DNA of 64,000 nt, taken from Lepidodermella squamata (lineage: Eukaryota > Animalia > Gastrotricha). Below are positions 36,000 through 56,964 of the stretch, piece after piece. The DNA is taken from NCBI GenBank assembly GCA_047495785.1, contig JBLDXI010000004.1, forward strand, positions 992,001 to 1,056,000, in the 5' to 3' direction. The position numbers and the translations under genes are program-made. The notes beneath the pieces are model-generated. The model worked only from the letters and a program-made list of their open reading frames with translations. It was not told the origin of the DNA and made no database searches. Position 1 is the stretch's first letter. Each line of letters opens with the position of its first letter.

Positions 36000-36548
36000 G
36001 TGGGGCGGCAGATTGATATATGGATCAGCAACGAAGCGGCACGATCTTCAATTATAGGTACTCCGACGGTAGAAGATTTCTACGGGAGCGACCACACTGC
36101 AACTTGCCTCAAAGTCAAATTTTCTGCGTGCACTTCCCCGCCGAAATCAGATGTCGAAGCGCCCCGGATAAACTTCAAATTTGATTCCAGGTCTGATGAA
36201 CTGATGAACTGGTCTCGATTCCGAAGCAGTCTTGATCAGTGTCTTGATGAACGCACAGAAGCCGTCAAGCCGAAAGTAGGCGACGAAATCAGCTCGATCA
36301 AAAATTACATCACAGAAATCTCAAGTACAGTTCAGTTTGTCACGGATGCGGTCGCGCCGAAGTGTCCTGCAAACAAGTTGCCGACCTTCAACATGAACAA
36401 GGAGATAGGAGATCTTCTGGATCAGCGAAATCAGCTACAACGTCTGCATGCTGAAACAAATGCGCCCGAAGTGAAAAGAGAGGTGAATCGCTTGAACCGC
36501 GACATAGACAACACTGTAACAGATAGGAAACTAACGATCTTTCCATAG
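36000..36548 (+). mobile_element. Non-LTR retrotransposon fragment (end of APE endonuclease + linker)
   Basis: IDIWIS...GSDH motif followed by the helical linker (NWSRFRSSL..IGDLLDQRNQLQR) that precedes RT. Confidence 0.7.
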
Positions 36549-38104
36549 TGAATTTATTCGAGCTGTTATTGCAAAAAGGGCGGCACGCGACTACTTTTTT
36601 GATCACCCAGCGCCCTATCCGCCCATTATAATTTTAATTATTTTCAAAAATAAAAAAGCGACAGGTACCCCTTTAGAAAAATTTCATTTTCTGCTCATAA
36701 ATAGTAGAAGTGCCCCTCTATCCAATGATACCAGGTTCATCTTGTGTACTCTTATGGTTATTGTTTTAAAATTCACTGAAAAAGCCAATAATTGGCCATT
36801 TTTGGCAAAATTGCCATTCTTCTGCCACGGTTGGCTACGTCATGCAAATTTTTAAAAATCTGACAAAATTATTTTATTCATATTCAGAACTTCCTCTATC
36901 CGGCAATATAAATTTCAACTGTGTATCATTTTCTTATGATTTTCCGAAATCCGGCGGATTAGCTTGGTATTACATTATTGTTATTACAAGATTAATGAAG
37001 TTGTCCAGAAAGGCCTTGCTGGCATGGCGTTCCGAAACGTCAGGTGGCCGTAAGGCACTTATGCATCGATGGTTTTTCTTGCCTTCTAAAAAGGTATCGG
37101 ATTTGTGTCGGCTAAGCCTTTCAAAGCAATCAACCAAGATTGCCGATGATCTTCATCGACTTGGTCTTAAGGGGCAGCCTCGACTCGATTGGATCATGAG
37201 ACGTACTATAGGACGCCGCGGCTTCGAAGCTCGCGTTACATCGGCCCCCTGAAGGCCGCAGACTGTGCATATCGGAATGTGCATATGAAATAAATTTTAG
37301 TCCACTAACTGCGGAATTTATGAATGAATAAAAATTGAAATTTAATTTAAATAAATGTGAATTCTTGATAACGCTTAATTTCTCTTCCGGCTGCCGTTGC
37401 CTACCTAAGCTCTTAACAGCAGAACCGCGTAAGGGAGACCGTAGAGATGTACCTGAAAGTTGGCTCGGCTATCGGTTGGCGTCCAGTTTGCAGTTTACAT
37501 ACCTAATCACCTATTAGTCATATTGTTATTGAAGTTGACCGTTACATAGCACAGTTTCATCAATGTTAAGCTTAAATGACTCTTCTATCATTCCACTATA
37601 GATCAATCATGATGAACTCTCCACCTAAACAGTGAATTCAATTTCTTGTTTATGATTTATGTAATCTATTAGGCATCTAGACATTTTATTAGCACGGCCC
37701 ATGCTGTTGTTCTATTTAGCTCTATGGCTCATCGTCTGCATCAGCGGATTCCTAGCCACGTTGTTGTGTCGGCGCCTGAGCCTGTTAACGCCGTTGGCCT
37801 TCTGCCGCGGGTTAACATGGTTCATGGCTCGCCGTCGTCGTCGTAGGTTCCTGATGCATTATATCTTGTTAATATCGCAAGTTGCCCCAGTTGGGCAACG
37901 TCTTGTTAGGCAGCGCCTAACGAGGAAGCTGGCTTTACGGGGCTGTAAATGGCTACACAGGGATAATAGCCGCAGAGTTGGACGTGAACTTTCAATGTGG
38001 CCGAAACTACTTCTGCTTCCATCCTGGTAAGTATAATTAATTAGTCTAATAACTGGTTAATTGTTGAATCTTAATTTGGATAACAGTAACTCCTCCTATT
38101 CAAG

Positions 38105-38209
38105 GCTACTACTGCTGCGGTCTGGAGATGTGTGTTTATTACGATAATATCTACTAGTAGTGATGTTACATTAATTAATTATTCTTAGGTTGAGCGCAAT
38201 CCAGGGCCC
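38105..38209 (+). other. 2A/StopGo ribosome-skipping motif LLLLRSGD|VERNPGP, split by intron 38130-38188
   Basis: Micro-exon g cta cta ctg ctg cgg tct gga gat, GT...TTCTTAG intron, then gtt gag cgc aat cca ggg ccc; exact match to D(V/I)ExNPGP with an upstream Leu-rich run. Confidence 0.85.
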
Positions 38210-41200
38210 GTGAACGGCAGCAATCCCATGCCCGGCAAAATTTGTTTTCAGTCTGTAAAGACGGGAAAGACTGTTGGTGTTGTGCCCATTGCTATAAACG
38301 CAGGAGCTTCAAGAGATGCTACAAGACCTTGGCTATCAGTTACCACACAACCTGCAGCCTCCGCACCGGTTGTTGCTAAGGTTAAAAGAGGTAAGACTAG
38401 AATTTCATCATGCAATGGCCAAATACATCTACATTGATATGTTATTATTAGAAATTGGCGTTGTGCGAGTTATGGATGTCGATCCGCCTGTGATAAAATC
38501 TGTCATTATCACGCCTGCCGGAACAGTGGTCAAGACATCGTCGCAGCAAGTAACCGCTGTCGTCGAGGGAAACCAGCCGCCTACACAAGATCAGCATCTG
38601 CTACCTATCGCTAAATGTTACGCTTATCGTAAGCGTAACATGAATTTGCGTAAAAATGCGTCTACAAGTCGTAACTCCGTCAGAATGTCTGCCGTTAGAC
38701 GAGTTGCTCCAACCGAAGTCGGACGACGTGCTTGTGTTAGATGCGAGGCCTCTAAAAAGATGGTTGCGGACCTACGGCGCCAGGTTCAAGACATGCGTCA
38801 GCCTGCCGTGAAGAGTGCTGTTATCCGCAGAGTTTGCATCAAATGCAACGCTGCCAAGCAGATTATAGCTCAAGAGCAGCGAGAAATCAAGGATTTGCGA
38901 CGAGAGTTGAAGTTGGCTGTTAAAACAACCATCCCTAAAATTCAATCGAAATCGATCGGTGTTCAAGTCGACCTGCCACCAGCTGTGATCCACGCGCCTA
39001 AGGCTAACCTGACCATGGATGAGCTAACCCTGTTCTTGCATAAGCAGCATAAACTGCGATCCTTGGATACTGTACGGGCTATTCGCTATGATGGCGCCGA
39101 TGGTGAGCTGACGTTCAATGTTGCCATGATCATTCACTCGATGAGCTCCAAGTGTTACGACTATTTACGTGATTCCGGCATTCTCATGCTGCCACATTCT
39201 TCGACAATAACAACCTTAGTTGCCGTTGATTACAACCCTGGCCTGTCGGATTCTTGCATGGAGTTATTGTGTGTCATGATCAAGCAGTCAGCAACGCCTG
39301 AGCGTTTCAGATTTGGCATGCTTTCGATCGATGCTATGGCCATTTCGTCGGGCCTACAAATAATTGATAAAGGAAATACGATCGTCGGGATGTCCCTCGA
39401 TCAGCCTGGTGAACCCGCAACTCAATGTCTGTCTTTCTGTCTGAAGTTTATCGAGGATAGGACGGTAGTTAACATTGCTAACTTTCCTATGGTCGATCTG
39501 CCTGTCTCATTTGTCGCAAAATTTTTAAAAAATGCAATTAGCCGCCTTTATAAGTTGGAAACGCCTATATTGGTCAAGGCTGCTACGTGGGACGGGGCGG
39601 GCGAGAACTGGAGCATGTATAACATGCTGTGTGAGCAGTTCGGCCCAGAAGGTTTGAAACATCCCGAGAAACCCGAGGAAGTCGTCCATCTTCTATTCGA
39701 CCCGCCGCACGTTATGAAAATCACGAGGAACGCCATCATTCATAAAAAGGTTGGAATTTTATTTAATACATTTTTTGTTGGCTAATTAATAGGCTAGTGG
39801 ACTAGAGGGTTTATAAAGCAACATTGCATGCCACAACATTGTGAAAAACACAATTTTTAATATCATGAAACCTCATCGCCTATTTACTGGAAATTTATTC
39901 TTGAAATTATTTAAACAACAGCTGACCATCGACTTTTCGACGACCCGGACAAAAAAGTTTGAGTAAATTAACATTGTAAATTCCTGTATTTTGGTGTGAA
40001 TTGCAGTTTATTTGGGTTTTTTCATGTAAGCAGCATCAGGAACCAGCTCAGCGATCCGGAATTCAGCGTTGTAAAACAGGGTTTTTCGTTTTTCGGCCGA
40101 GAAACTTCATGGAAATTCGTGTAAACCCTGAAATTCGGTCATGTAAACTCATGGATTTTCGTCTTTCAGTCATTTCTTCGATGTATTTCAATGGAAGCTG
40201 AACAATTTCTCGACTGAAATGTCCTCACATGATTTTACATCCTGGAAAAGACGTTGTATTCTCATGTAGGAAGATCGATTGAATAAAAACTGAATTAATT
40301 TTTAAAATTCAACCGCGATCTACCTAATTTTGCTGCTCGAATTTTCAAGTCCGAGTCGCAAGTGACATTACCTGAAATTACACGATCGGAAATTTCACGG
40401 AATTGCAAGGAAATTTCCCCTCATTCTATTTGGGGAGAAACTGAGGGGTTACACGAATATACACGGATTTGAGAATAATAAATACTGGTAATTTATTGCT
40501 CAAAAATCACCGTGTAAATTCATGTAGACAGATTTTATAATAAAGAATCGAGAAATAATGAAATTGTTGATTAAAATTTAGGTATTTTTCGCCTAAATAA
40601 ACGAAGTTATGTGATTTCAGTTTTAATGATGCAAAAATATTCATAGCGCAGCCGGTTTTTCCTTTGGATTAACGATGAATCATCATTGAGTCATCAGAGC
40701 GTCACGTGACTGTAGAGCAAGAAGCTAAGTTTTCTCCGCAATTCTCCGCGTTTCTCCGGGTTCCTCCGCAATTCTCGGTTAATTCTTCAATTTCAAGGTG
40801 TTTAAGGTGAATTGGAGCTTGTTAGTACCTGCTGCATCCGGATACGGTTAACGGTTCGAAGCAACCGGTTCGAAGAAAATAACGCCACTGATAAATCAGC
40901 AATTTCATTTTATCTCGGCCGACCATCGCGGCCATCGTGGTGAAAATAAGAAGAAATAAGAATCGTATTCACAACAATTATGCTCAATAAAATATTGAAA
41001 GGAATGATCATAAGTACACATTTTGGCAGCCAGGATTGTTTCGAAACCGCACGAGATATATCTATTCAGTAAGCTTCGAGTCATTCGGCAGCTGACAGCA
41101 AAATTTCCGAAGTGAAAGTTACCTCAAAATCGAGCATAGTGACGCCAAAATTGCGTCTCAACACTTAGAAGAAGCAGGGAAAGAGCGATATATAGGCATT

Positions 41201-44200
41201 AGAGGCACCGATAAACATCCGATTTAATTATAAGCCGCAATATTCAATAGGAAATTATTAAAATTAATCGAGGAAACTGTTGGCGGAATTTATTTATTTA
41301 GAAGCTATTACACCCAAAGAGGGAAGAGGGAATGAAAGCAGACTGAGAACAATTGATAATGATAAAGAATTTTTACGGCCGGCGAGATCAGAATAAAGAA
41401 TAACTCAATAGAAACAAGAATTTTTGGAATATTTTAATAAAATGTAAAGAATTTGTTGAGTCAGAAATAAGTTGATAGGTACCTTTAGGATTTCCCCATA
41501 TTTTGTTAAATTGTTTCCAAGGCGGGAGAAAAATTATAGCCATGGTTGGGATCTCGAGGCATAATTTTAGCAAAACACAACCTTGATCAACAGATCTCTG
41601 TGAGATTCGAACTTTGAGGAACGAGAAAAAGATAACGGTTAATTATGAGCGCACTTCCCTACTTTAACGTGTAAAAACGAATAAGAAATTCTACATTTTT
41701 TCTGCACAACGATACATCAGTACAGTCTTGTTGGAAAAGGTGACACGGCCGGTTTAAATAAGAGTGAAGAGCACGTAAAAAAATTCATACATGATGAAAC
41801 CACTCAAGCGTGACTTTAACGTAAATTTAAACATCACCTACCCACACATGTTATCGCTTATTGTTTTTCGAACATTTCTGGTACAATTTCGAAAATATTT
41901 TCAGAATTAATTTAAACGAAGAGATGAAAACGCCGCAGTCGGTTTGAAAAAGAGGGCATTTGCAAAACATCGCGCAGAAAATGATTACAGCGTAAAATTC
42001 GAATTCACTGGAGCGTGTCACATTGAATTCAGACCTGTAGAATGTGGCTAAAAAGTGCGAAATAATTTTGGCCGTCGCTAATCAGAACATTTTTCAATTA
42101 GTGTGAATGTGAGCAACTTTTCACAAGTTTTCTAGCATCTACGCGTGGCGAGTTCTTGAAAATCAGAGTGCCGAGTTTGAGCCTAATTCAGGTATGATTT
42201 TGATTTTTCCGAAATCGCAGTAGCAATCGATTGCAGATTGCAGCATCGCCGTATTTTCTACATAAATCATAAATGTATGAATCCCATAGTACCTGGTACC
42301 CAAAACTGAGCATAGCAGAGGTCCATACATGTTAATTTTTACAATACTGTAACGCAGAAATGGTGGATAAAACGCGAAAACTTGCAGCCGAAATGCTTGA
42401 ATTCCGTACTGGAACCTCAATACTGAGAGCTGCGTTCCAATTTTTATTATTAAAAGCCGCATAACCGCAGCTCTCAGGCATGATCTGTGGCGTCCTCAAT
42501 AAGGGCTAATTATGAATCAAATGGCCTAATAAGCCGAATTCAAGTAACAGAAGTTATGATCACAAATTGTAGAAAAATGAGAAAAATTCTTGGGTATATC
42601 GACGTGGTGGTCGTAAAGAAATTCAGCACTGGCTTGAATAGCTCGATTTTTGACCGCGCCTCAATCGGATCTTCCATAGCTTGGCGTTGGTTCGATAGCA
42701 CGCAGGAATAAGGACTGAAATAAAATCAGATAATAAAAAAAAATGATATAAAATTGAATTAGGAAAAATTGGAAAATTTAAAATGTAAAAATGTAAAAAT
42801 TTAAATTGAATTATTTGAACATTCAAAATTAGGAATTAGGAATGATATCGACGATCACGGCAATCAGACAAATTCAGGAAATTTCTCGAAAAAAGGTAAA
42901 AAATCTGATAAATTACCGAGTGTAGACTAGCAATATCGGAAGCCAGTAAGCTGAGTCGTCGCCCTCATCGGTCAAAGCTCGACCAGTCGATCAGCTGCCA
43001 TCCAATCTAAAAATGATAAAAATATTATAAATTTCCAATTTGCATTTATAAGGCGCAGTGCGTAACAGTAAAGCTGCTGGGAACCAGGTTTAAAATTTGG
43101 CAGTATGAGTTGCCCAGGGCCTAGGCAAACGTTTTAACCATTATTCACGATGGCAAACAATAGAAGTCCTCATAATCAATATAAATTACAAAATGAAATT
43201 TTTCCACCAATTTTGGGGCCGAAATCTTGATATGAAGCGGATAGTCTGACTTAATTTCCGCGTCTCATCAATTTCTTAGGAAAAGACATCTGTGGATAGG
43301 GGAATAAGGAGGCAAATTTTGAGAAATCTACCTTGGGCAAACAGCTTAGGTCAGCTTTGATTGCTCATTAGCATTGCCGTAACACAACTGGACTAAGTCC
43401 AACTGGTGTGGCTAACGGTGTGGCTAAACGGCCGCAAGCTCGAAACTTGGCTGGCGAATGAACAGCCATGCATCAAAAATTGCAGTGATCAAATAGCGAA
43501 AAATAAAATTCTAAAATCAGAAAAATAATCAAATGAAGGATGAACGGCATGTGGCATGTGGCATGTGGCAGTAAGACCATTGTGACGCTTGGATTGTTGC
43601 GTGAAAATAAGTGCGCAACAACTCCAATTTCGCACAATCAAGAAAACGCAAGAAAAAAATTGAAAATTAAAATTGATAAAAAAATCACCTGATAAAAGAG
43701 AAATTTTATAAAAATCAGAAAATACCCAGTCCAGCCTAGTTCCCGGCGTATACGCTTGAAAGTTAAACATTATTCGCCCATAATGTCGAATTTTCAATCG
43801 AATTTAAATGAAAATTTTCAGTGAAAGAAGAAATGGGAAATTTGAAGAGCGGCTAAAATGCCTACTTGTGGAAAATAATGGCCACATAATATCATGGTGA
43901 AGGCTGACCGAACTGAACGGTTTGATTTTACCATAGCGTATTTGAGAGCCAGGTAATAAAAATAAAAAATAGTTACCACAAATCCGCAAGCGGAAGAAAT
44001 AAAAAAATTCCTAAATTTCTAAAATTAGGCTCGAATTTAACCGATTTTTCAGACAATTTTGGTTCGATTTTTCGCTCAAGAAATTCGAATTTTGGCAAGC
44101 TTGCATTTTGAATTCATTGTTTTCTATAGCTGTTAATTCATCTTAGAATCGTCATGATTCGAAGCTATAGGTTGGAATGGAGTTAAAATTATCAGAGAAA

Positions 44201-46035
44201 TTTTAGAGATTTCACACCACTTGTCTGATTTTTGAATTTTTGGCAATTCATCGCGCCAAGAAAATGTCATTATTTCAAGATGAAATATTTTTTCTATAAA
44301 GCTAAGACCCTTCAAGCAAAGCGAGTCACATAACACCAGAAATTTAACGCAAAAAACGCCGCAGCGATGGAAGTGCGGCGCAATGGTAATTATGGCTTTT
44401 CTGCGCGCTGAGGTCACGCGGCTTTTTCTATAATTGGACGTAATAAAATAAAGCGGCAGACAGGGGTCACTAACGACATGTTTCAGCCTAAAAGCGAAGC
44501 AACTTTCTCATGATATTCCATTACCTGCTAGGGACTGAGGATAAATATTAATAATTTGATTTGGCAGAATTATTAGCTCGTACTGCGACGAGTTAATCCT
44601 TCTGACCATTGTTGCGCAATCGGATCATTTACAGACCTTCGATTTCGTGCGGGTTACGAATTCTTCGATTTTGGATGCTTATAATTTTCCTAAGTAATTA
44701 ACTGCTCTTGGCTAATTTTTCGATTTTTCTACCGCTGCGACCTTGAAATCGTCGCTGAAGCAATGAATTTAGCTTGATGGGCGGCGGTTTTCCTATAATC
44801 TAGCATTATTTCTGTTTGCCCCTTATGACCATATAATTAGAGTGATAGTTTCATAAAATCTAAAACTTTTTCATTGGAAGCACATCTATTTTAATAGTTT
44901 TATGACGTTATCCGTTATTTTACTGGTTTACAGCTACGATTTCATGCAACTAGTGGACGCAAAGTTGATGACTAAGTAAGTTTTATGCCTTTTAAAGAAT
45001 AGACTGTCTACAAAAAAAATAATTTTAAATTATCACTTTCCTGGAGCCAGAAAACCCAAATTTGAGTCGTCTACTAGTAAGAATGACCAAAAAACATTAT
45101 CAAAATGTCTTTTTTGAATGAGATTTCAAAGTCGAAAAAGTCTTGAAATTGACGGTTTTTTCATGAAAAAAACATGACAGCGTGAATGAGCATCATCAAT
45201 AGTAGTAGTTAGTAAAGTTTATTCAAGAATTCCGAAACTTTGCCAAAAAATTTCAAAACGTGTGTCGAAAGCTCGAAATTGGATTTTTTAGTGCAGTGCA
45301 AAGAAGTCGCTTTGAGCTCGGTAATCTCTTAGAGTGAATCACGCTAGTACTAAACATGCGAGAAGCTGGAGGGGGTTCGGAGGGGGTTCGGTTTCACAAT
45401 GAAAAAATACTCCTCCGCCAGTAGTGTTACGTAATGTGCTTCACTCACAATGAAAAAACGAGACTCATTTTTCGAATGGATTTTTTGCATGACGACTCTG
45501 CTTTGTGCTCGGATTGTCACAATTTTTATCGTAAAAACAATTACGTTTCAATTTTCGAATTGCGGTTAACAGAAAAATTAAAGGGAAAAGCGAAATAAAA
45601 TATAGACAATAAATATGTGAACGCTGAATCTCGTCTTTACGTCGATCGTCCTCAAAAATGAAAAAAAAATTTATCAGCATTTTTTACGCGCATTTTATTT
45701 TCTATTTTTTCGGCTATCTGGAATTACTGTGGGCTGTGGGATCGATGTAAAAAAATGCCCAAGAAGAACTGAGGTCTTCCCGCTACATTATTTCTCGGAC
45801 GATTATTGCCGCCGAATTATCCTTTAGCGTGTTTAGCGGCGAGGTTGTTGACAGTGTACGGCAGTGTTTCGCCGGCTATATAGTTTTCCGTATAAATAAC
45901 TATTTAAAATGACCAACAATTTTTCGCCCTTTGACATTAATTATTTTCAAATTCGATTTTTGGCCTCTTCATCTCCGTCGTATCCCCGTCAAATAACAGG
46001 CTTTTAAATAAAAATTTTACTTTTATTTTTTTCAG

Positions 46036-48380
46036 AATTTTCTGCGATTGCCGGTACAACCGCCAGAAGTTCAGGATTTTATTTAGTTGAACTAACATGC
46101 CGTTATTATCAAGCCGAGCAGTTATTACGGAAGACGCTGCTGCTCAGCTAGCCTATTTTCTGTCATGAACTAGCGGTACCGAATTCCACGACCGAATTTC
46201 TGAAAAGGAAAAACCTGGAACATCAGTCGACCGTGCTGCGAAAATGTTGTCGCTTAGTGGCATCGGAATCGACAGTGGTGTACCAATTATTGCTAGCGTG
46301 ACGACGCCGTAATTCACAGCAACTCGGTAAGACTGAATCAAGCGCCGAATTCGCCGGAACCATTCAACCGTGAAAATTTCGTAAAAATCGGATACTGCTA
46401 CGGCAATCGTTGTCTTCGATTGGCCGGTGAGGCATTGTAGCTCTCTAGCTTCGTTTGGCCAAATCGGCATCAGAATCAACACAGCAATGACCCGAAAAGC
46501 ATCGGTCTACTTCGTCCATTTCTCTCTAAACACCAACCTATTTTCCCGCAATTTTACCGCGAACGCAGCGCGGTCAGTGAGGTTGCCATCGAATTCAGCC
46601 AGCCGTTACTTCTCGGGGAAGAATTGAACTAGAACCAGGCTCATCGTCAAGTTTCATTGGATCCAATTTGGTACTCGTCATCTGATGACAGGTGAGCTAT
46701 TTCTTTCTATTATTTCTCCGACTGATCATCGACTTGTGTCTTGTGTACCTGTTGAATTTTTTAGTAAATTTTCTCTGAAATTTATAGCTGTCGTAATATT
46801 TGCCCCTGACATCTCCATGCTTGAGCTTCCCTAAATTTTACTTGAATTATTTAGAAATACTTTTTTTCCTTTTTTATTTATTTTCAGCTTCTTTTATAAT
46901 TTTTTTTATAACGCCTTATTATATGCCTCTCCTCAGATCCGTTCACCTGGGTTTTAAAATTCGATTTTTCGATAGATTTTATCACATTTTTTTCAGCGGG
47001 TTCACTCAGGCGTGAAGCAAAGCCCTCTAACCTTTTCTCCCGGATTATTCCGATTTTTTTATTATTGTATTATTTTTGAATTCTTTAACATGATTTTTTT
47101 ATAGATAAATAACGCTTGATCAAGGCATGAGGATTTCAAGGCCGGCGTTTGACTCGGCGAGAGGCTGGCTCACAATTCGTCTATAAATTCGAAAAATTTG
47201 GAAATTTGTGGCTTTGGACTCGGCCTGTTGTACCATTTATGGGCAGGAAGATGACAACAACTGATCTCAACTCGGTGAGACTGAACCCAGCGAACTCTCC
47301 AAAATTATTTAGCCTTGAGAAATTCCGGGCAAACCTATCTGTTTGAGGAATCGTTTTCTCTTCAATTCGTCGGCAAGCCCTTGAGTTTCGTTCAATCAAA
47401 TGACGTCAGACTCGACACGGCGATGACCCGAAAATTGTCGGTGTATATACTACGGCCTAAAATGCGGATTTCTCTCAGAACAATTAAATATTCCCGCATT
47501 TCAACCGTGAAAAAGGCGCGGTCAGACAGAGCGATCTCCGAATCGAAATCACTCAGCCGTGGTCAAATTAGCGCTGCAAACTTTCGGTCGGTCCTGTTAC
47601 TGGTTACCTGATGATAGGTAAGCTAACTAATTTAATGCCTCAAATCGATTTTTTATTTAATTAATTTGAGAAGCAGGTGGGGAATTTTCGATTCACGTGC
47701 TTAGCGAATTTATTTAGTTCATGTTTCACGGAATTTTCAGCAGTCGATATATTAGCCCATGATATCACTCAAACTTGAGTTGTGTGTTATCATTTTCCTT
47801 AATTAATTCTACTTGAATTATTCAAGAACGGTTTCGGCTATTTTCAGCTTTTCATTTCCCCCGGAAACGCATCGTTTTATGCCCCTCTGAGTAGCTTAGA
47901 TCACCTGGGTTTTAAGTTGTATTCCAATTACCGCTCAATTTGACTCATATTTTCATTCGGTAGATTCATTCAGGCGTGAAGTGAAAGCTTCGAGCTTCAA
48001 ATAATTTAGGAACTGTTCGTTGAATTAATAAATTCCAAAAAATACATTTATTCTATTTTTATCACAGGCAACGCTAGCCGCTGAGACCCGAGACTAGCTG
48101 GTTTAATTTATGGAATCGAGTCGAAGAGTCGAGACGAGACCGAACGTTAATTCGAATTATGTCCGGACTGTTGGCATATTCTCGAATTCTCAGTGAATTT
48201 TCCTGCGGCTCGATTTCAACATTTCGATCCGGAAACGAGTTTATCAGACACCCTGCAATCACTCAACCGTGACGGAGTTGCTGTTGCAAGTCAAATTTGA
48301 GCCTTCAGTTGTCACTGAGACGTCGCAGGCTGGCAAGAACTTCATCGGACGAGACTGCAGTTCAAGCAGCCTAGTGAAAG
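46036..48380 (+). pseudogene. Tandemly duplicated (~1 kb period) decayed exons within the cargo
   Basis: NSVRLNQAPNSPEPFNRENF (46321) vs NSVRLNPANSPKLFSLEKF (~47269), IFPQFYRERSAV vs IFPHFNREKGAV; matching AG/GT sites; multiple stops and frameshifts. Confidence 0.6.
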
Positions 48381-49786
48381 GTATTAGGGTGGTAGCAGTA
48401 ATTTTTCGCTTGGATTTGTATCGAGAAATTTAATGTTGTGCGGTTACGATAAATTTTCCACTCCTCTGTATTATTTTCCAAATTATTTATAAATTGAAAA
48501 TTAATATATGAGAATATCTTGCTTTAAGAAAGTTCAATTCTGGTGACTTCAGCTTGGATTAGATTTTTCAAATTTTTTCTTGTATTAATTTTCGTTCATA
48601 ATTTGGTGATGATTCGTGAAAACTCACTCGCGAAATCCATCTTACGATGTGACATTTTATTCGCAGGCGATCAGGATCGGAAATATCAAGCCTTCTAGCT
48701 TCGTTATTCGCTTTAGCAATCCTAAGATTTAACAGCTGAGTGTGGTACCGTTCTCAAATTTTTTAACAAGACTCGCTGTCATTTTTGCTAATTTTTGGCC
48801 ATTCCGATTTGACCATTAACTTTTTTAAAAATACGGCATTAATATGCTTTATTAGATTAGTTTTTAAGGCAGAGATTCCTTTATAATTCCATCAATGATT
48901 GATTTCAAATCGAATGTAAAATCAGCCAAGCGTGACTGAATTGCTATTTGGACTACGTAAAAGAAGTAGAAGCTGAACATTTCAAGATTACGAATGTTCT
49001 GCTTTGAGTTGGATACATGATTATCTCAGGCTACTAAATTTTGTAAGGTCTTGCTTGATTCCTCAGCTAGCTTTTGCTCAAATAATCTGAAATTCAAATG
49101 TTCCTCCGTTTGCAGGAATCAATTCACTTCTCCATTAGCAATATCCTATCACAAGCTGAAAATGAGTCGATTCAACTTCAGCCGAAAACCCGTCAATCAA
49201 GGATGTCTCGCAATCGCACTGAGATATCCTGAGGAAAGTGCCGAAAGTAAATCGAAATCGATTCGCCTAGCTTCGAAGACCAGTATTTTGTCAAATCCAC
49301 AAGAGCTTAATCGCTCGTCTTGTTACATCACAAGTTATGCTGCACGTCCGCCGGAAGTTTCTCAGACTTTGTCGAACTTCAAACTCGATTGTTCGTTGCT
49401 TCGTTACTCATCTCGCAACTCTTGATCGATTGTGATCCTTTCTAGCTCTAACTGCATTTTAACATGACAAATCAATAAAAGTTTCATAATTTCACTCAAA
49501 TGCCTTCGAAAAGCCCGATTTTGATCTTTGAAGCCTAAAGAAATTCTTGCATGAAACCCACTTGTGCTCATTTCATTCGATTTTCAGATAGTCTTGATCG
49601 CTGGAACCTCTTAGTTCTATTTTAGAACCTTCAGTATCCTGTTTTGAAGTGACAAATAGCTAGAATAAGCGTATGTCCGACTGCTGCCATGAAAAAAACG
49701 GCTTCAAAATGCATCAAAACACCGAGTTCAGACCTTGGTTTGCTGGTTGAACCTCGAACACGAGAAATTTTGCGGCGGCGTCACCC

Positions 49787-49800
49787 GTTACCATGGCAAC
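49787..49800. promoter_or_regulatory. RFX X-box consensus GTTACCATGGCAAC
   Basis: Exact match to GTTNCCATGGNAAC; TCAAGGTCA nuclear-receptor half-site just downstream. Confidence 0.5.
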
Positions 49801-52800
49801 GGCTAGTCAAGGTCACGTACTCTTATTTTATTTTTCCGAGAAGTCTTTTGATGGGATAAAATTATTTTTAAGAACTAACAGCGACTTGGTTAACAAAAAT
49901 TTGCGTAAAATAAATCCCACTTTTGAAGGAAAAACAGGCTGCGCTATGTTGGAAAAATCGGCGAGGTTAAGTTGTAGCGGATTTTTTATTTACGCCAAAC
50001 GGCGAAGTCGTGAAAATGACGCAGTTTGGAATTCAGCGCGAAAATTCGAAACAAACGTTCTTTCGCTTTAAGCCTTTGCTTACGGAATTCAGGAAAATTC
50101 AGGAATATTTGAAAATGCTTTCCTACCAAGTTAGCTTATTTTTGCATAGAATCATGCAGAATACAGAATTTTCGAATTTGTTGAGATTTTTAGTAATTTC
50201 AGAAATTTATCAAAATTTTAAATTTTGAGAGAAAAATTCAGGAATTGGATTTCTTGATTATTCAAAAATGTCGAATTTTTCATTTGCCATGAAATTAATT
50301 TGCCTGAGCTATTTTTCGCCATTTTCAACTGGTGTCTTTGGTGACGGATAATTGCTTCCAAAATTTACCAAAATCAGACTGATGGGTAGAAATTAATTGC
50401 TGAAATTATCGATTTACTTAAACCATTTGCGCTTCATCCAAATGTCGAAATCGGTTGCGTATTTAGTGATCAACAAGATCCCTCAACGTCAATTGGAAAA
50501 AAATTAACGGAACATTTGGAAATTTTCCAAGCTTATCCTTGTTATTGTTGCCTATCCGGTAGGACCAACCGCCGAGAATCGCCGTGAATTGAGGTCAGGG
50601 CGATATGTCCCAGCTTAAGCAGCCCTTTATCTATTCACATTGGAGAATTCATCTGTGATTATACCGCTGCTGTGTCTTGTTACAAAAATAACTCAACGGG
50701 TTGAGCTCCATATCGCGGCACATTGAATATAAATGAGTTATATATGAGTTATATGCGACAGGAAATCATAAAAAATTGATATTTATAATTCCTTATATCA
50801 CACAATGACAATGTCGGATTTTTATGGCACTCGAATAGGACTTCGGATTCAGATTCTAGATGTCTCAAATTCCAAAGCGCGGAAAATTCGAATGATAATA
50901 TCGACGTGCAAATTAGAATTTGGAGAAGCTAGCGAAAATTTAAGATGACAAATCAATTTAAAAATTCATAAAATGAATTCAGCAATTTACGAAATTCAAG
51001 GCTTGAGTTCAGGGCTTTCTCCTAAAATAATTTATAAATACTCTGCTCAGGGTAAAGTCGATCTGGGCTTAAAATGTGGCGCAAGGCACAAGTATCAGAA
51101 ATCAGAATAAAAATGATTGAAAAATCCTGAATTTTCGAAATTATTTTGGTACCACTGCAAGTAAGTTTGTTGAGCTGAAAGATCGGGAGAAAAAATTCCT
51201 ATTAAGTCTAGCCATGTAAGATCCCTAACAACATTTAAAATAAAAATATGAAATAATAATAGAAGCGTAATTATTATTCAGGTTCCACATGAGCGCCTCA
51301 GTAGAAAAATAGAAGGTGGCAAAATTATCACAGGAAAAGATAAAAATGCGAAAAATGGATATAAATATTTCTCCATTAATTTTAAAGGCGGTTGGACTTC
51401 GGATTCTAGTGCCAAAACTGATGAAAGATGATCACAAACACGAGTTTCCTTATATCTATTAGCGAATTTTCTTGATTTTAAATTTCGTAATTTTAAATTT
51501 TAAACCTCTCAAAAAATCAGCCAAGCGATAAAAGCCAAGCTTGAATTTTGTCTATAAAAAAATTCATAACAGAGCGTGTCAATCGGCCATACTAGTACCC
51601 AGCAAATGAACGAGCCGTGGATGGATTTAATGTCACGAGAAAATCTCTTGTAAATGAGAAATTAGATGAATAAAAAATGCGAAAAAAATGAAATAAAAAC
51701 AAATTTTAAATAAAGCGGGCCTTGTGTTACGTGTCATCTGGCACGTGCGCCTTAGGACAAACTAAGTGGAGTGAGAGCCACACAGTTAATCGCGATTTTT
51801 TTCGTCGTTTCAAATCAGGTCAATTTAGTTATTTCATGCAGCTTGCTTTTTGATTGAACAAACTGGCCGGTCTAGGTACTTCGTTTCGATGGCGGGTGGC
51901 AAGGTCAAAGGTAAGCAGGCAAAGCAAATAATAATTTATTTATCGCCCGCCGCACGCTATGGCGGTTGTTTATTGGCCGCGCCTGATCAATTACGGGACT
52001 TTCGGCAATTCGATTTTACGAAAACGGCTTCACGGGTATTCCTGTCTGACGATGCCAACTTTATTCTTCTGCCTGAGTAATAATTTCGGATAATTTCGAC
52101 AGGCAAACGCAACGTAGATAACTCGCTTTCCACATTCCACCTGTACGTTTAACAAGATTAAAATCTTACGGAATTAGAAAAGGCCTGTCATCTATGTAAG
52201 CTAAAATTTGATTTGATTTTTATCACGATTATTCATCGTTGTTTTGACCCTCGAGGCAAATTTCATACTAACCGTATTTTTCCTATAACAGCCCGGGAAA
52301 CTAAAATTACAACGTCGAAATTAAAATTTTTTTTAAAAATTCATCGTTGGTCGATTCGTACTATTTCCCATATTTTCCAACCGACTTCGCCTGTCAACCC
52401 TGGAGTACTGTTAGCGATGAGCGATTCTTAGGGATTCATTAGAACAAGTCATTTGCAGTATTTTTCTCGACAACTTGCGTTTGATTTTAGAATTTCGATT
52501 TCGAGTTTAGCCGTTAAATTTCAGTGTTAATCGCGTGACTTGAAAAATTCCGTAAAAATTTGAATTTGTTCAGAATTTGTAAAAATTCCCTTTCAGAATA
52601 TAGAAAATTTGTGTTTCAGCTGCTAACCAAATTTACTTAGGTTTATTCATCTTTCCCTTTTGAGATTTCATTAGCCTTTTTCAAAAATGGGAATTTCCGG
52701 AAATTCTAATTGGGTAATAATTTAGAATTAATTAAAAATTGCTTCGTTACTTAACAAATAACCAAATATGCTAAGAGTCAATTTTTTTATAATAATTCTA

Positions 52801-55800
52801 TGAATTTCTGGCGAAGAATGAGGAATGAGTTTTGAATTGAAGACTCTCTTCTCTGATAGAGAATATTACGCTAAATACACTGGTGATTTTTTTAGAAGTA
52901 TTGTGGTCAATATCCGAAAAGAAATTTCGGGCCACTAGAAAATTCTAAAATTTGTTTCCGCTCATTTGGTTCCGGTAAGAGGAGGACCCAATAATAGATT
53001 AAAATATGTTCACCATATAAAATTTTAAAAACATCTCAGGAGGGCACAGATCTGAAAAAACTTTTTGATTTCGCATAATTTTCATTTAGTTCAATCTTTG
53101 TATCACTATAGTTTGTGGGCAATGGCCCCCAATCTCACCGAGCCTCTCGCATTTCCTGAAACGCGGTGAGTGACAATCCACCTTAAATTTATTTAATTAT
53201 ATAATTAATTAACGTTTTTACTATGGAGGATATTTATGTCCTCGAACGACTGCATTATGGAACGATCGCGTCGTTGAGCGAGCCCGAAAATATACTGAGA
53301 TGAAGGTAAAAAATGTTAAGACAATTTCTGATAAATTTCTGATAAATAAATTATTGCCTACATCACCTACATCAGGCTGGGCCAGACTTTGTTCCTGAAT
53401 AGAACTACGGCAAGCTGGCGAAATGTGCTATGATTTTCTGCCATCGGAAACATTTAAGTTATTTTGGCATTTTACATCAAAAGACCAACAATTTTAATTA
53501 TAAATTCAATCTAAACTTTTCAAATGGAGGAACTACTGTCGGATTTTGTCATCCCATTCAGTTGAATTTTGAAATGGTGTTAATTTTCAGGGATTTTGCA
53601 CAAGATCGGCTGCTGTCGCCGACTAAGTTCATGACCCAGTGTTGCTGCTGCTGCTGCTGATTTTGAAATTCAGGTGATCAAAACCTCGATATCACGTTTC
53701 TACTACAACTACGTTTTTCGTTATTTTCAGCTGAATCTGTTGCAACCGTGGACTTAAGCTGTTCATTCAAGGCTGAATTCTGGCTGTTCTGGCAACGCCA
53801 AATGAGTCGCATTTAGGCGCAAAAGTGCGCCGAAGAAAGACAATAAAATAATGATTTTTTGTGCTTTTTGCGAATTAGTATTGAATTTGAAATTTTCATG
53901 AAAATTGCCTTTGCTGTGAATATCGTCAATTTTTTGAAAATTGCCGATTTTCTCTTGCTGTTCTCATTTTGCCAGTCCTCTGCTTATCACACCATTTTTC
54001 TCGATTTTTTCCCATTTTTGCAAATTTTGCGTGAGCATTGGTTTTATTTCTGCGCTGTGCTACCTATGCTTACACGGAATTACACGATGTTTCCCGATTT
54101 TTTTGTGCTTGTTTTGCGCATTCTGTGTGAAAAATGCTGTTTTGTGCCGTTTGTACTGTGCTTCCACGGAATTACACGGAGTTGTGAGTCTGGTTGATTT
54201 CGCCGGAAACGCTGGAAAAACTTGTCTTGACTTGCTTTTCTTGACTGAATCATCTTACATGAGTTTACAACGGCGAAATGTCGTTGGAAACTTAAGTTTG
54301 ATGATTCAGCTGGGAGAAGCAAGTCAAGACAAGTTTTTCCAGCGTTTCCGGCGAAATCAACCAGACTCACAACTCCGTGTAATTCCGTGGAAGCGCAGGG
54401 CGAACGGCGGCCAATTATGGTCTAAATGTAAATTCATGTGGGCTGAATCAATAAAATGATCATGTAAATTCATAGGAGTCGATCTAATTTCTCCCTCACT
54501 TTACAGCAAAATACACGGACGTGTTTTTAACCCATTTTACACGAGTTTACAAGCTGAAACTTTTTAGTCCGGGGATCGACTGGGACGCCTTCGGTGCCGT
54601 TTTCGAACCCAGCCTAATCGCTTTGTTTCCTCGGATCGGCCAGGGCCAGGTGTTATGGGCATTTGTCGAAGAAATTTACCTTCGTGACCGTAACCGACTG
54701 TTGCAGCGGTCGACTCGGCTGACCGCGCATCACGTTTTCTCAGTCAAGAAGAAAAATTCCCCGCAAAAAATGAATGTCGCGTACGCCGCGCAAGTGCTAT
54801 CACGGTCTGTCGCGATAGAAATTCTCCTCCTGCATCCTGACAATGTAGATGCGCAGGCGACGGCTTTTTTTCTATTGTTGATGGACGTCTGGTTTGATTG
54901 CCTCAACGGCAACAAGGAATTCGTTCACGAGAACTTTCTGAAATTGAAGCCTAACATTGGTCCGTACCACGTTTCCGATGATAAACGTCTTGTCTGGTTG
55001 GAGGAAACCTTTGTTCCACTCATTGAGAGGATCAATCTCCAAAACAAGAAGGACAAAACGTCGCTGTCGTGGCAAGCCAATCGCGGTCTCCAGGAGACCT
55101 CGCTCAATTTCGTCAATCTCGTTCGTGATGCTCTTGGTAAAGGCGTTGGAACTTTCGTACCAGCTCGTGCTAACCAAGACCATAATGAAGTCCTATTCAG
55201 CCAATTTCGATGTGACGGTGGCTCATCAAAATCGAATCCTAATATGGCGGCAATTCAGAGAAGGGCCGGTATTTTGCGTCATGGCGGGGGTTATTTCGGT
55301 GCGTGCCGAGGTAGCAATGTCAAGGTGCGCGGCCGAACCAACGGCATACCGGTCGCAGATGCTCGAATACTGAAGAAACAGTCGATGAGCCGAGCTAAAG
55401 AGGCCGGTATCCACCGTGTCTATTTGCCGGGTAACCTCGAGATTGACGACTCATCGATCGAATGGGCGGCGGGATTTATTACGCGCCTGCTGTGCCTCAA
55501 GCCCAGCCCTGAGGTGCACAGTCAATATGTCGCCTTGCGATCGTGGGGTAAAGCAACGCAGCCCAATGGTGATGTTTTACGAATCCTGAAGTATTGCCTT
55601 AGCGAACTTCAAGCCGACCTCGTTAACTGCAAGTCGCTTCATCCGCTCATCCCAAAAATTCAAGCAAAATTCAACGATATTCGCGACCAAACTATCATTT
55701 TTCCTGTCTTACAGCGAGCTCAATTTATGGTGGCACGTCGAACGGTGCGTCATTTTAGAGATAAATGCGGCGGCTCCTCTCTAGCCTTCCGAGCCAGCCT

Positions 55801-56964
55801 TAAAAAATTCGGTAAAGATTAGTTTCGAATTTTATTATTTCAATTCTACCTCTCGTCTGCGATTCAATGGTTGTCCGCCATTCTGTTGCAATATTGATAT
55901 TTACTGTGATTATCTTGACAATTTATATATATAGTCATATTCCAAGCCTTCATATGTTGTTGATCTGCTAATTCTTTCACGGCGATGCTTCCTCAAATAG
56001 CGATGTTGCAGAACTTATAATGACTAGAGATAATTTTTATATCAATTACTTGTGATCATTGTTATATAATGATGTGATATATTTGTTGAAATTGTCAGCC
56101 ATTGTTGAATTTTTCCCAAATGAGTAAGCGTCTTTCTTGTGAAAATCCTCTACAGCTATTACATGTGTTGCCATTGTTGAAATTCTTATACTGTGCCATC
56201 GAGTAATATTTTGTATTTTTGTTAGTTGGTTGCTCTCTTGCGTAGCCATTGCTCAAATCTTCGTCAGCAATCACTCAATTTTACGACGAGTATTATTTTT
56301 ATCAATACCGTATTTGTACATATCTTTGTTGAGGTGGCTATTTTTGCAATTCAATGTTGAAAATGCTATCTACCTGAATACTTATATCACGTTGAGATTA
56401 TATCGTCATTACTGAAATAGATTTTAACGGTGGTTACATATTATTGTTGACAGATTTAAACGGTGGTTACATATTATTGTTGACACATCGCCGGTGATTA
56501 TGTGATTAACCGATGTTAACAGAGGCAGAGTGAAACAATAAATTTATACTTTAATGGTCATTTTTTCTGCGTTTTTGATCTTAATATAACAACTAAAGCC
56601 GCCGACACCCTAGACTTAACAGTTCCTGAATATTTCCATGCACAGGACCATTTACACGCAGGAAAATAATTTTAGGCTGTTCTCTTTTGGTGACTCTAAA
56701 AATAGCTCAAGATTGCCCATGCTCCATTCATTATTATTTACAACGTTTTTTTATCGCCTCTACCATGCGTCGCATGACAGCGTTGTCATGGCGATCACTG
56801 CAAAAAATTAATGAGATGATTCACCGCGGGGTCGTGGACTTTGGACCTCATTAAAAAAAACTCGTCTTTCTTGCTTTTTATCGAGCCGCGGCGTCCTATA
56901 GTACGTCTCATGGCTTCTGGCTGTGATCCACTCAAAGAATAACAAAGGTTTTATTCGATTTTAG

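What the first reader, a model, noticed from the sequence alone, without database searches (positions are those of the whole stretch)
37701..39943. P-element transposase expressed through an intron-split 2A (StopGo) ribosome-skipping peptide
Seen: canonical GT-AG joins (38026/38105, 38129/38189, 38390/38452, 39749/39922) keep one frame and produce ...PKLLLLPSW-LLLLRSGD-VERNPG/P-VNGSNP..., continuing into a P-type DDE transposase (123 aa + 916 aa). The motif only exists after splicing of a 25-nt micro-exon, so motif scans of six-frame translations miss it. Established: D(V/I)ExNPGP causes co-translational skipping in picornaviruses and is known from non-LTR retrotransposons and some invertebrate cellular genes. 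I do not know of it in P-superfamily cut-and-paste transposons. Inference: a bicistronic DNA transposon in which splicing and 2A efficiency both gate free transposase; skipping the micro-exon would shift the frame, recalling splicing-controlled germline restriction of the Drosophila P element.
Basis: partly seen in the sequence, partly recalled or inferred. Interest (0 to 1): 0.92.

Follow-up and report, generated by a model that had tools for sequence, protein, structure and literature searches.

The report
P transposon with intron-split 2A leader
A cut-and-paste (P-type) jumping gene in this small animal genome places a short greasy leader protein and a virus-style 2A "ribosome-skipping" site, readable only after two short introns are spliced out, in front of its transposase. 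I found no report of this layout for DNA transposons, and neither the splice nor the skipping could be tested.

Summary
With GT-AG introns removed, window 37701-38026, 38105-38129 and 38189 onward read in one frame as ...PSW|LLLLRSGD|VERNPGP. That is a full 2A/StopGo core with its upstream Leu-rich tract and Gly.

- **Transposase:** the downstream protein is a P-superfamily transposase (HTH, RNase H-like and GTP-binding insertion domains).
- **Element:** it spans 37195-56912 with perfect 29-bp inverted ends.
- **This copy is dead:** a 14.6-kb non-coding insertion at 39943/39944 splits exon 5, and the rest of the gene lies at 54574-55822.
- **Conservation:** four other lineages of the element in this genome (48-67% transposase identity) keep the same layout. 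Each has an ATG-started hydrophobic leader, a phase-2 intron, a short exon ending ...LLxxGD, a phase-0 intron exactly between Asp and Val/Ile, then (V/I)(E/Q)x(N/Q)PGP.
- **Selection:** the leader is under purifying selection in one pair of lineages (dN/dS about 0.15-0.19).
- **Departures:** only two lineages keep the canonical core. Two carry Glu-to-Gln and one carries Asn-to-Gln.
- **Outside this genome:** the nearest relative from another sample has no leader and no NPGP.

No RNA data were available, so splicing and skipping remain inferred. The scan had already reported this design on sister copies elsewhere in this genome. I found no published case in a DNA transposon.

The parts
37195..37223 (+). 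5' terminal inverted repeat of the P-type element (29 bp, begins CATGAGACG)
   Evidence: Perfect 29-bp inverted match to 56884-56912. The same 29-mer occurs about 99 times in the genome at up to 2 mismatches, mostly as pairs about 360 bp apart, against 0 for the control pattern.
37701..38026 (+). Exon 1: start of the leader. ATG, an N-terminal hydrophobic segment, then an Arg-rich stretch.
   Evidence: Open frame from the ATG to the GTAAGT donor. Hydropathy of 1.6 or more over residues 1-29. Homologous to the C7 copy's leader, sharing the block F.RGL.WF..RRRRFL..Y.LLISQ.
38027..38104 (+). Intron 1 (78 nt, phase 2)
   Evidence: GTAAGT...CAAG ends. If retained, a stop follows at once (TGG TAA). 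The phase is conserved in all five lineages.
38105..38129 (+). Exon 2, the micro-exon: encodes (W)LLLLRSGD, the upstream half of the 2A peptide
   Evidence: It is 23/25 identical to the C16 copy, and both differences are synonymous. An alternative acceptor at 38086/38087 would give a 43-nt exon in the same frame.
38130..38188 (+). Intron 2 (59 nt, phase 0), lying exactly between the Asp and Val codons of the 2A core
   Evidence: GTGTGT...TTAG ends. The same position holds in the C16, C7, C29, C66/C24 and C25/C46/C60 copies.
38189..38209 (+). VERNPGP: the downstream half of the 2A core. The predicted skip falls between Gly (38204-38206) and Pro (38207-38209).
   Evidence: Within roughly 100 aa around the junction, LLL..GD....PGP holds all but two of the columns invariant across the five lineages.
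38189..38390 (+). [quoted passage not shown]
   Evidence: Homologous to the exon-3 regions of the other lineages (the ..F.S...G block).
38391..38451 (+). Intron 3 (61 nt)
   Evidence: GT...AG ends. Reading through it ends in a stop.
38452..39749 (+). Exon 4: coiled-coil/CxxC region, P-element HTH domain and N-terminal half of the RNase H-like domain
   Evidence: Pfam PF21787, E = 4e-8, above its cut-off. PF12017, E = 0.003, below its cut-off in this copy but above it in the C29 copy.
39750..39921 (+). Intron 4 (172 nt)
   Evidence: GT...AG ends. The position after ...NAIIHKK is conserved in sister copies.
39922..39943 (+). First codons of exon 5 (LTIDFS..), cut off by the nested insertion
   Evidence: Homology to LIIDFA/LIIDFS in sister copies ends here.
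39944..54573 (.). 14.6-kb nested insertion that breaks the transposase gene. It is non-coding and AT-rich, with short inverted ends of its own.
   Evidence: No ORF of 150 aa or more, other than one at its right edge. Its ends are CCCGGACAAAAAAGTTT and the reverse complement of CCCGGACTAAAAAGTTT.
54574..55822 (+). Rest of exon 5: GTP-binding insertion domain and C-terminal part of the transposase, with the stop at 55820-55822
   Evidence: tblastn against the C29 second half gives 53% identity over 434 aa. Pfam PF21788, E = 2e-11. The frame is open.
56884..56912 (-). 3' terminal inverted repeat

Best explanation
This is an autonomous-type P-superfamily DNA transposon, dead in this copy. Its single spliced mRNA would encode, in one frame, a 123-aa hydrophobic leader that ends in a 2A/StopGo peptide, followed by a transposase of about 916 aa.

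The 2A exists only in the mRNA. Its upstream half (LLLLRSGD) sits on a short exon, and its downstream half (VERNPGP) opens the next exon.

The proposed mechanism is as follows. After the introns are removed, the ribosome translates the leader. At Gly-Pro of NPGP it releases the leader without forming the peptide bond, then carries on and makes a free transposase that starts with Pro. Transcripts that keep intron 1 or 2 run into stops and give no transposase. If the ribosome fails to skip, the transposase stays fused to a membrane-type leader and would probably be kept out of the nucleus.

Shown here: the element's anatomy, the P-family domains, the conserved exon-intron layout, the conservation of the motif, and purifying selection on the leader. 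Inferred: the splicing, the skipping, and what the leader does.
For: 1. **Motif.** After GT-AG splicing the window has every residue that mutational scans mark as critical: two Leu in the hydrophobic cluster, Gly11, Asp12, Val13, Glu14 and Asn-Pro-Gly-Pro (critical positions from preprint 10.64898/2026.09.24.754024).
2. **Conserved layout.** The window, C7, C29, C66 and C25 lineages share it at 48-67% transposase identity. Each has an ATG-started leader, GT-AG introns of 53-78 nt, intron 1 in phase 2, exon 2 of 25-85 nt that is always 1 mod 3, and intron 2 exactly between Asp and Val/Ile. All read through in frame.
3. **Conservation island.** In about 100 aligned residues around the junction, LLL..GD....PGP holds all but two of the invariant columns.
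4. **Coding leader.** dN/dS is 0.19 and 0.15 for the two halves of the leader between C66 and C29. An N-terminal hydrophobic segment is present in the four lineages where the start of the leader could be read.
5. **No alternative start.** No conserved ATG lies downstream of the 2A in exon 3, so translation must begin upstream.
6. **Genuine mobile P family.**
   - Inverted ends of about 28-29 bp that start CATGA.
   - 8-bp target duplications at the C25 and C46 copies. These are 99.9% identical to each other but sit at different sites.
   - About 150 and 99 end-sequence matches for the two end variants, many of them in short non-autonomous copies.
   - HTH, RNase H-like N and GTP-binding insertion domains.
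7. **Age.** Both deep branches of the 2A-bearing clade carry the module, so it predates their split.
8. **Not chance.** The split motif occurs at 11 genomic sites, against 0 for the control pattern.
Against: - **No transcript evidence.** No RNA run holds this sequence. The one run that does hold it is DNA contigs with the introns in place and no joints.
- **No assay.** Skipping was not tested.
- **Non-canonical cores.** Only the window/C16 and C29 lineages keep the canonical core. C66/C24 and C25/C46/C60 have Gln for Glu14.
   - A 2026 mutational scan found no Glu14 substitution above its activity threshold in the two viral peptides it scanned, apart from His in one of them.
   - Odon et al. 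2013, citing Donnelly 2001, name Glu to Gln as the one tolerated change.
   - C7 has Gln for Asn16, which is expected to be inactive.
- **Recent movement with a variant core.** The copies that moved most recently (C25/C46) carry the Gln variant, so full 2A activity may not be needed for transposition.
- **Absent outside this genome.** The nearest relative found elsewhere (56% identity, contig L040) begins at its inverted end and has neither a leader nor NPGP.
- **Fast-evolving leader.** Between the window and C7 the leader is only 39% identical, with pN/pS about 0.56 and synonymous sites saturated.
- **This copy.** The window copy is broken and has no matching 8-bp target duplication.
Confidence: 0.62

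Rival explanations
1. The layout is real and spliced as described, but the 2A-like site does not separate two proteins efficiently. It would instead act mainly to lower or stall translation (dosage control), or be a decaying relic. The transposase would then be made as a leader fusion, or in small amounts.
For: Three of the five lineages carry changes at Glu14 or Asn16. The recently mobile C25/C46 copies have the Gln variant. Preprint 10.64898/2026.06.17.732966 reports that most retrotransposon-associated 2A-like peptides reduce protein abundance rather than simply skip. Odon et al. 2013 found Nematostella LINE 2A-like sequences with changes at Glu, and the two they tested were inactive.
Against: The window and C29 cores are fully canonical. 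Leu-Leu, Gly-Asp and Pro-Gly-Pro are invariant across an old clade, which argues for continuing selection on the motif. Glu to Gln was reported as tolerated. A nuclear enzyme fused for good to a hydrophobic leader seems unlikely to work.
Confidence: 0.22
2. The gene model is wrong. The leader frame and short exon are not joined to the transposase, which would start at a site of its own. The in-frame 2A would then be an artefact of choosing splice sites by eye.
For: No RNA evidence exists. The exon 2 acceptor is ambiguous in the window (25 or 43 nt). The window and C29 copies have a Met shortly after NPGP.
Against: Frame, intron phase and GT-AG ends are kept in five lineages even though their intron sequences cannot be aligned with one another. 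C66 and C25 have no Met near the start of exon 3. Exons are more conserved than introns between the window and C16 (0.86-0.92 against 0.77-0.80). The leader is under purifying selection.
Confidence: 0.08
3. The locus is a domesticated host gene of the THAP9 type rather than a transposon, and the leader-2A belongs to a host function.
For: The window copy lacks a matching target duplication, and its exons are free of stops apart from the insertion.
Against: It has perfect 29-bp inverted ends, and its ends are shared by about 99 mostly short copies. Sister lineages have 8-bp duplications and near-identical copies at different sites. The gene itself is split by a 14.6-kb insertion.
Confidence: 0.03

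Closest known systems
2A-like sequences at the N-terminus of APE-type non-LTR retrotransposon ORFs (L1Tc/Ingi, CR1, Rex1, Crack, L2; Heras 2006, Odon et al. 2013, PMC3708506)
   Same: A transposable element puts a D(V/I)ExNPGP site near the start of its enzyme's reading frame, after a short leader. Some lineages also carry Glu-substituted variants. One Nematostella CR1 has the same Glu-Ser to Gln-Leu change that is seen in the C25 lineage here.
   Different: Here the host element is a cut-and-paste DNA transposon of the P superfamily. The motif is interrupted by a spliceosomal intron, which is not reported in the 2A papers I read. The leader is a conserved 120-185-aa hydrophobic protein.
N-terminal 2A-like signal sequences giving dual protein targeting (sea-urchin NOD-like receptor genes; Roulston et al. 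2016, PMC4981915)
   Same: A hydrophobic N-terminal leader is followed directly by a 2A. In that system the skipped product stays in the cytosol and the unskipped fusion enters the secretory pathway. The same logic would release the transposase only when skipping occurs.
   Different: There the 2A-like peptide itself is the signal sequence and is only about 25-30 aa long. Here the hydrophobic segment lies 90-160 residues upstream, in a longer leader. No localisation data exist for this element.
Drosophila P element (31-bp inverted ends starting CATGATG, 8-bp target duplication, four exons, germline-restricted removal of the third intron)
   Same: The ends start CATGA and sister copies have 8-bp duplications. 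The transposase has HTH, split RNase H-like and GTP-binding insertion domains. The gene is multi-exon, so transposase production depends on intron removal. Many internally deleted non-autonomous copies exist.
   Different: Pfam detected no THAP zinc finger. An extra upstream leader cistron and a 2A are present. Tissue-specific splicing was not tested.
Viral 2A/StopGo peptides (FMDV F2A, porcine teschovirus P2A and others)
   Same: The core matches, as do the upstream Leu-Leu cluster and Gly11. The window sequence LLLLRSGDVERNPGP fits the consensus at every constrained position.
   Different: It lies in a nuclear, intron-containing gene of a DNA transposon rather than in an RNA virus polyprotein. 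Activity was not measured.

Membership tests
P superfamily of DNA transposons | Terminal inverted repeats of about 30 bp | tested here: met
   A 29-bp perfect inverted repeat at 37195 and 56912. Sister lineages have ends of about 28 bp that start CATGAGACG.
P superfamily of DNA transposons | 8-bp target-site duplication | tested here: inconclusive
   Met in sister copies: AAGTTAAG at C25, CAAATTTC at C46, and 8-9 bp at C29. Not met at the window copy, where the flanks are GATTGGAT and GCTTCTGG, nor at C66.
P superfamily of DNA transposons | Transposase with a P-type HTH, an RNase H-like catalytic domain and a GTP-binding insertion domain | tested here: met
   PF21787 and PF12017 in exon 4. PF12017 is below its cut-off in the window copy but above it in C29. 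PF21788 is found at 54548-55819.
P superfamily of DNA transposons | N-terminal THAP zinc-finger DNA-binding domain | tested here: not met
   No THAP hit in any exon of the window or C29 copies at E up to 0.01-0.1. THAP is typical of the superfamily but not universal, so this lowers the membership claim only slightly.
2A / StopGo recoding peptides | Core octapeptide D(V/I)ExNPGP in frame with the downstream protein | tested here: met
   DVERNPGP after splicing in the window and DVESNPGP in C29. The variants are DVQSNPGP, DIQLNPGP and DVERQPGP in the other lineages.
2A / StopGo recoding peptides | A suitable upstream tract (hydrophobic Leu cluster, Gly before Asp) of about 10 or more residues | tested here: met
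   LLLLRSG before the Asp. LLL and G are invariant in all five lineages. The positions needed are taken from the scan quoted.
2A / StopGo recoding peptides | Production of two separate polypeptides from one frame (measured skipping) | not testable with these tools
   This needs an in vitro translation or cell reporter assay.
2A / StopGo recoding peptides | The motif is actually present in the mature mRNA | not testable with these tools
   No RNA run was found. The only run that holds the sequence is DNA contigs with no joints. Support is comparative only.
2A-like N-terminal signal sequences (dual targeting) | A hydrophobic signal or anchor at the N-terminus, upstream of the 2A | tested here: met
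   Hydropathy windows of 1.6 or more at the N-terminus of the window, C7 and C25 leaders, and from residue 18 in C66. This is a hydropathy scale only, not a signal-peptide predictor.
2A-like N-terminal signal sequences (dual targeting) | Different localisation of the fused and skipped products | not testable with these tools
   This needs tagged expression in cells.

The most novel reading that the evidence does not exclude
The hydrophobic leader plus intron-split 2A is a portable cassette that different classes of mobile elements in this genome have acquired. It would work as a splicing-dependent and skipping-dependent gate: only fully spliced mRNA on which the ribosome skips yields free nuclear enzyme, and everything else yields a truncated leader or a membrane-tethered fusion. 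Here it is seen in P transposons and in at least one LINE. By the scan's earlier, unchecked notes it is also in Helitrons, and it heads a few other genes whose nature I could not establish. This would be a previously unrecognised self-limiting control layer for DNA transposons.
Probability: 0.3. Interest if true: 0.85.

Novelty: new variant of a known kind. Interest (0 to 1): 0.72.

Why it matters
2A/StopGo recoding is regarded as mainly a device of RNA viruses. In cellular genomes it is rare and, among mobile elements, is known essentially from non-LTR retrotransposons. A conserved 2A in a cut-and-paste transposon would extend it to a second major class of mobile DNA.

An intron inside the motif has a practical consequence. 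Surveys that scan six-frame translations or poorly annotated proteins will systematically miss such cases, so the true spread of 2A in eukaryotic genes may be underestimated.

The hydrophobic leader offers a testable model. Transposase release would be gated by both splicing and skipping, which parallels the splicing control of the Drosophila P element. It also matches the dual-targeting behaviour shown for sea-urchin 2A-like signal sequences.

The natural Glu/Gln and Asn/Gln variants in sister lineages form a ready-made allelic series for such tests.

Tried and rejected
- **RNA evidence.** The search for sequencing runs returned one run, not on record as RNA. Laid on 36800-40800 it proved to be DNA contigs of a slightly different strain, with the introns present and no joints. 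It says nothing about splicing.
- **Relatives in other species.**
   - The word-indexed protein search gave a single hit.
   - The exhaustive representative search gave one close hit, the same protein, plus about 400 distant P/THAP9-like proteins that align only to the catalytic core.
   - The one close relative's contig lacks the module.
- **Leader homologues.** Pfam found nothing. The two Atlas feature searches gave either no usable hit or only generic membrane-protein fragments scoring below 0.9. I take this as "looks membrane-like", not as membership of a family.
- **THAP domain.** Not found.
- **First search for the ends.** A search of the window with the sister lineages' end sequence found nothing at up to 3 mismatches. 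The window lineage has an end variant of its own, found afterwards by inverted-repeat BLAST.
- **Target duplication at the window copy.** Not present.
- **dN/dS, window against C7 leader.** Synonymous sites are saturated, so only pN/pS (about 0.56) could be read.
- **Rejected readings.** A chance motif (11 sites against 0 for the control, and conserved across lineages) and a host-gene origin (inverted ends, short non-autonomous copies, nested insertion).
Full report
**Observation**

| Exon | Coordinates | Ends / content |
|---|---|---|
| 1 | 37701-38026 | ends ...CCATCCTG before GTAAGT |
| 2 | 38105-38129 | follows ...TTCAAG, ends ...GGAGAT before GTGTGT |
| 3 | 38189 onward | follows ...TCTTAG, opens GTTGAGCGCAATCCAGGGCCC |

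The spliced frame reads ...PKLLLLPSW LLLLRSGD VERNPGP VNGSNP.... This gives a leader of 123 aa up to the Gly, followed by Pro.

The 25-nt size of exon 2 is not certain. An acceptor 18 nt upstream also keeps the frame without a stop, both in the window and in the C16 copy (sequences). The 2A is the same either way.

**What the downstream protein and the element are**

- **Domains.** Exon 4 carries the P-type RNase H-like N domain and, more weakly, the P-element HTH.
- **Second half of the transposase.** The gene appears to stop just after 39940, but the second half, including the GTP-binding insertion domain, lies at 54548-55819.
- **Nested insertion.** The two parts are separated by a 14.6-kb AT-rich stretch with no long ORFs and short inverted ends of its own, at 39944-54573.
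- **Ends of the element.** It is bounded by a perfect 29-bp inverted repeat at 37195 and 56912 that begins CATGAGACG. That 29-mer occurs about 99 times in the genome, mostly as pairs about 360 bp apart, which are short non-autonomous derivatives.
- **Target duplication.** The window copy has no matching 8-bp duplication.

**Sister lineages**

The genome is about 121 Mb of eukaryotic sequence in 151 contigs. It holds related copies at 48-85% identity. I fetched them and defined their ends.

- **Ends and duplications.** C29, C66 and C25/C46 have inverted ends that start CATGAGACGTAG. C25 and C46 have clean 8-bp duplications, and C29 has one of 8-9 bp.
- **Recent movement.** C25 and C46 are 99.9% identical yet sit at different sites with different duplications, so this family moved recently.
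- **Intact transposase.** The C29 copy's transposase reads open as 473 + 437 aa with HTH, RNase H-like N and GTP-binding domains.

This is a genuine P-superfamily family, although no THAP finger was detected.

**Conservation of the split 2A**

All five lineages have the same plan:

- an ATG-started leader exon;
- a GT-AG intron in phase 2;
- a short exon (25, 49, 67, 67 or 85 nt, always 1 mod 3) ending ...LL(L)xxGD;
- a GT-AG intron of 53-64 nt in phase 0, exactly between Asp and Val/Ile;
- an exon opening (V/I)(E/Q)x(N/Q)PGP.

The introns cannot be aligned between lineages, but the exons can. In an alignment of about 100 residues around the junction, LLL..GD....PGP holds all but two of the invariant columns. 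Retaining either intron gives in-frame stops.

Between the window and the degenerate C16 copy, the micro-exon differs at 2 of 25 bases, both synonymous. Exons are 86-92% identical against 77-80% for introns.

A genome-wide pattern for the split form finds 11 sites, against 0 for the reversed control, and 8 of them are in P copies.

**The leader**

- **Shared features.** It has an N-terminal hydrophobic segment in the four lineages where its start could be read. It has no Pfam family and no usable Atlas relative.
- **Selection.** Between C66 and C29, dN/dS is 0.19 and 0.15 for its two halves, with many synonymous differences. It is therefore a coding sequence.
- **Rate.** It evolves quickly. 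The window and C7 leaders are 39% identical with synonymous sites saturated.
- **Charge.** The strong positive charge of the window leader (23 Lys+Arg against 4 Asp+Glu) is not shared by C66 or C25. I would not build on that feature.

**State of the core**

| Lineage | Core |
|---|---|
| Window / C16 | DVERNPGP (canonical) |
| C29 | DVESNPGP (canonical) |
| C66 / C24 | DVQSNPGP |
| C25 / C46 / C60 | DIQLNPGP |
| C7 | DVERQPGP |

A tree of the catalytic core places (window, C7) and (C29, C66, C25) as two well-supported groups. Glu at this position occurs in both groups, so it is probably ancestral.

The literature on the Gln change is mixed.

- Odon et al. 2013 state that, of such changes, only Glu to Gln does not ablate recoding.
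- A 2026 mutational-scan preprint reports that no Glu14 substitution passed its threshold in the two viral peptides it scanned, except His in one.
- A 2026 PNAS survey lists His, not Gln, as the rare natural variant at this position.

The Gln forms are therefore likely to be weaker, and the Asn-to-Gln form in C7 is probably dead. The most recently mobile copies carry a Gln form. This is the main reason I keep a sizeable rival in which the site acts as a brake or a relic rather than as an efficient separator.

**Outside this genome**

The only close relative in the protein collections (56% identity) comes from another sample. Its contig begins at a P-type inverted end, and its transposase starts at an ordinary ATG with no leader and no NPGP in any frame. 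On the same tree it falls outside the 2A-bearing clade (midpoint root only). The module is therefore old within this genome's clade, but it is not a general P-element feature.

**Transcript evidence**

There is none. No RNA run holds the sequence. The single run that holds it is DNA contigs from a slightly different strain, colinear with the introns. In those contigs, none of the listed differences fall in the micro-exon or in VERNPGP. That is only weak support, because 56 further differences were not shown.

**Comparison with what is known**

2A-like sites are established in non-LTR retrotransposons (Odon 2013; Heras 2006), in NOD-like receptor genes, and in a few other cellular genes. The recent large surveys I could read mention LINE ORF1/ORF2 and one Ty3-like element, but no DNA transposase and no intron-split motif. 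Full-text searches combining 2A terms with DNA-transposon, P-element, THAP9 or Helitron terms found nothing relevant.

The closest functional analogue is the sea-urchin N-terminal 2A-like signal sequence, which partitions a protein between cytosol and secretory pathway.

The scan's earlier notes report the same design on sister copies in this genome, and similar leaders on LINEs and Helitrons. I re-derived the P-element part independently and confirmed one LINE case. I did not check the Helitron claim.

**Verdict**

The function (splicing plus StopGo release of the transposase) is a well-founded inference but untested. I class it as a new variant of a known kind. The window copy itself is a dead example.

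Noticed in passing
window 39944-54573: A 14.6-kb AT-rich non-coding block sits inside exon 5 of the transposase. It has 17-nt imperfect inverted ends (CCCGGAC[A/T]AAAAAGTTT) and a 127-nt hairpin-like inverted repeat near its right end (54146-54408). It is probably a composite of non-autonomous elements. I did not classify it.
   Followed up: partly
window ~40645: In the one public DNA run laid on the window, a contig breaks at about 40645 into sequence that reads as a P-type inverted end of the CATGTGACGTAGATAGGACGC variant. The window assembly has no such end there. This suggests a short P-derived element whose insertion differs between the two samples.
   Followed up: no
L043:2700-8162 (G000:C28:109000-114460): A LINE whose 423-aa ORF1 opens with IEANPGP after an apparent intron. 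The preceding exon ends ...FNWLLLCGD before GTGCGT. An APE + reverse transcriptase ORF2 lies downstream. An intron inside a retrotransposon is odd, because spliced copies should lose it. Unexplained.
   Followed up: partly
L042 (G000:C9:~3393278, minus strand) and L041 (G000:C1:~4939549): Two further genes begin with very short N-terminal 2A-like leaders: MRLPVLFAVNLLQLCGD | IESNPGP and ...MPFLLLICGD | IESNPGP. Both are split at the same Asp/Ile position. The C9 downstream ORF (475 aa) has no Pfam hit, and neither locus matches the P transposase. They resemble the sea-urchin 2A-like signal sequences.
   Followed up: partly
G000: C2:1720945, C15:2777444, C42:2172366, C7:3991258, C10:322697, C33:2002418, C55:1993668: Seven uninterrupted GD-I-E-x-NPGP sites in three sequence types, against 0 for the control pattern. 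They are probably further mobile-element 2A sites. I did not examine them.
   Followed up: no
L033:3720-4690 (G000:C29): In the C29 copy the leader exon is interrupted by about 1 kb that is absent from the C66 lineage. That copy's leader is therefore broken, or it carries an extra intron, even though its transposase frames are open.
   Followed up: partly
window 36000-36548: Just upstream of the P element's 5' end there is an ORF whose translation contains a ...GSDH... motif. By eye it resembles the end of an APE endonuclease domain of a non-LTR retrotransposon. I did not check it against Pfam.
   Followed up: no
L040:1-30: The related P element from another sample (a Logan contig) starts exactly at an inverted end, CATGTGACCTACCCAGGACGC. 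This shows that the CATG.GAC...AGGACGC end signature is shared beyond this genome.
   Followed up: no
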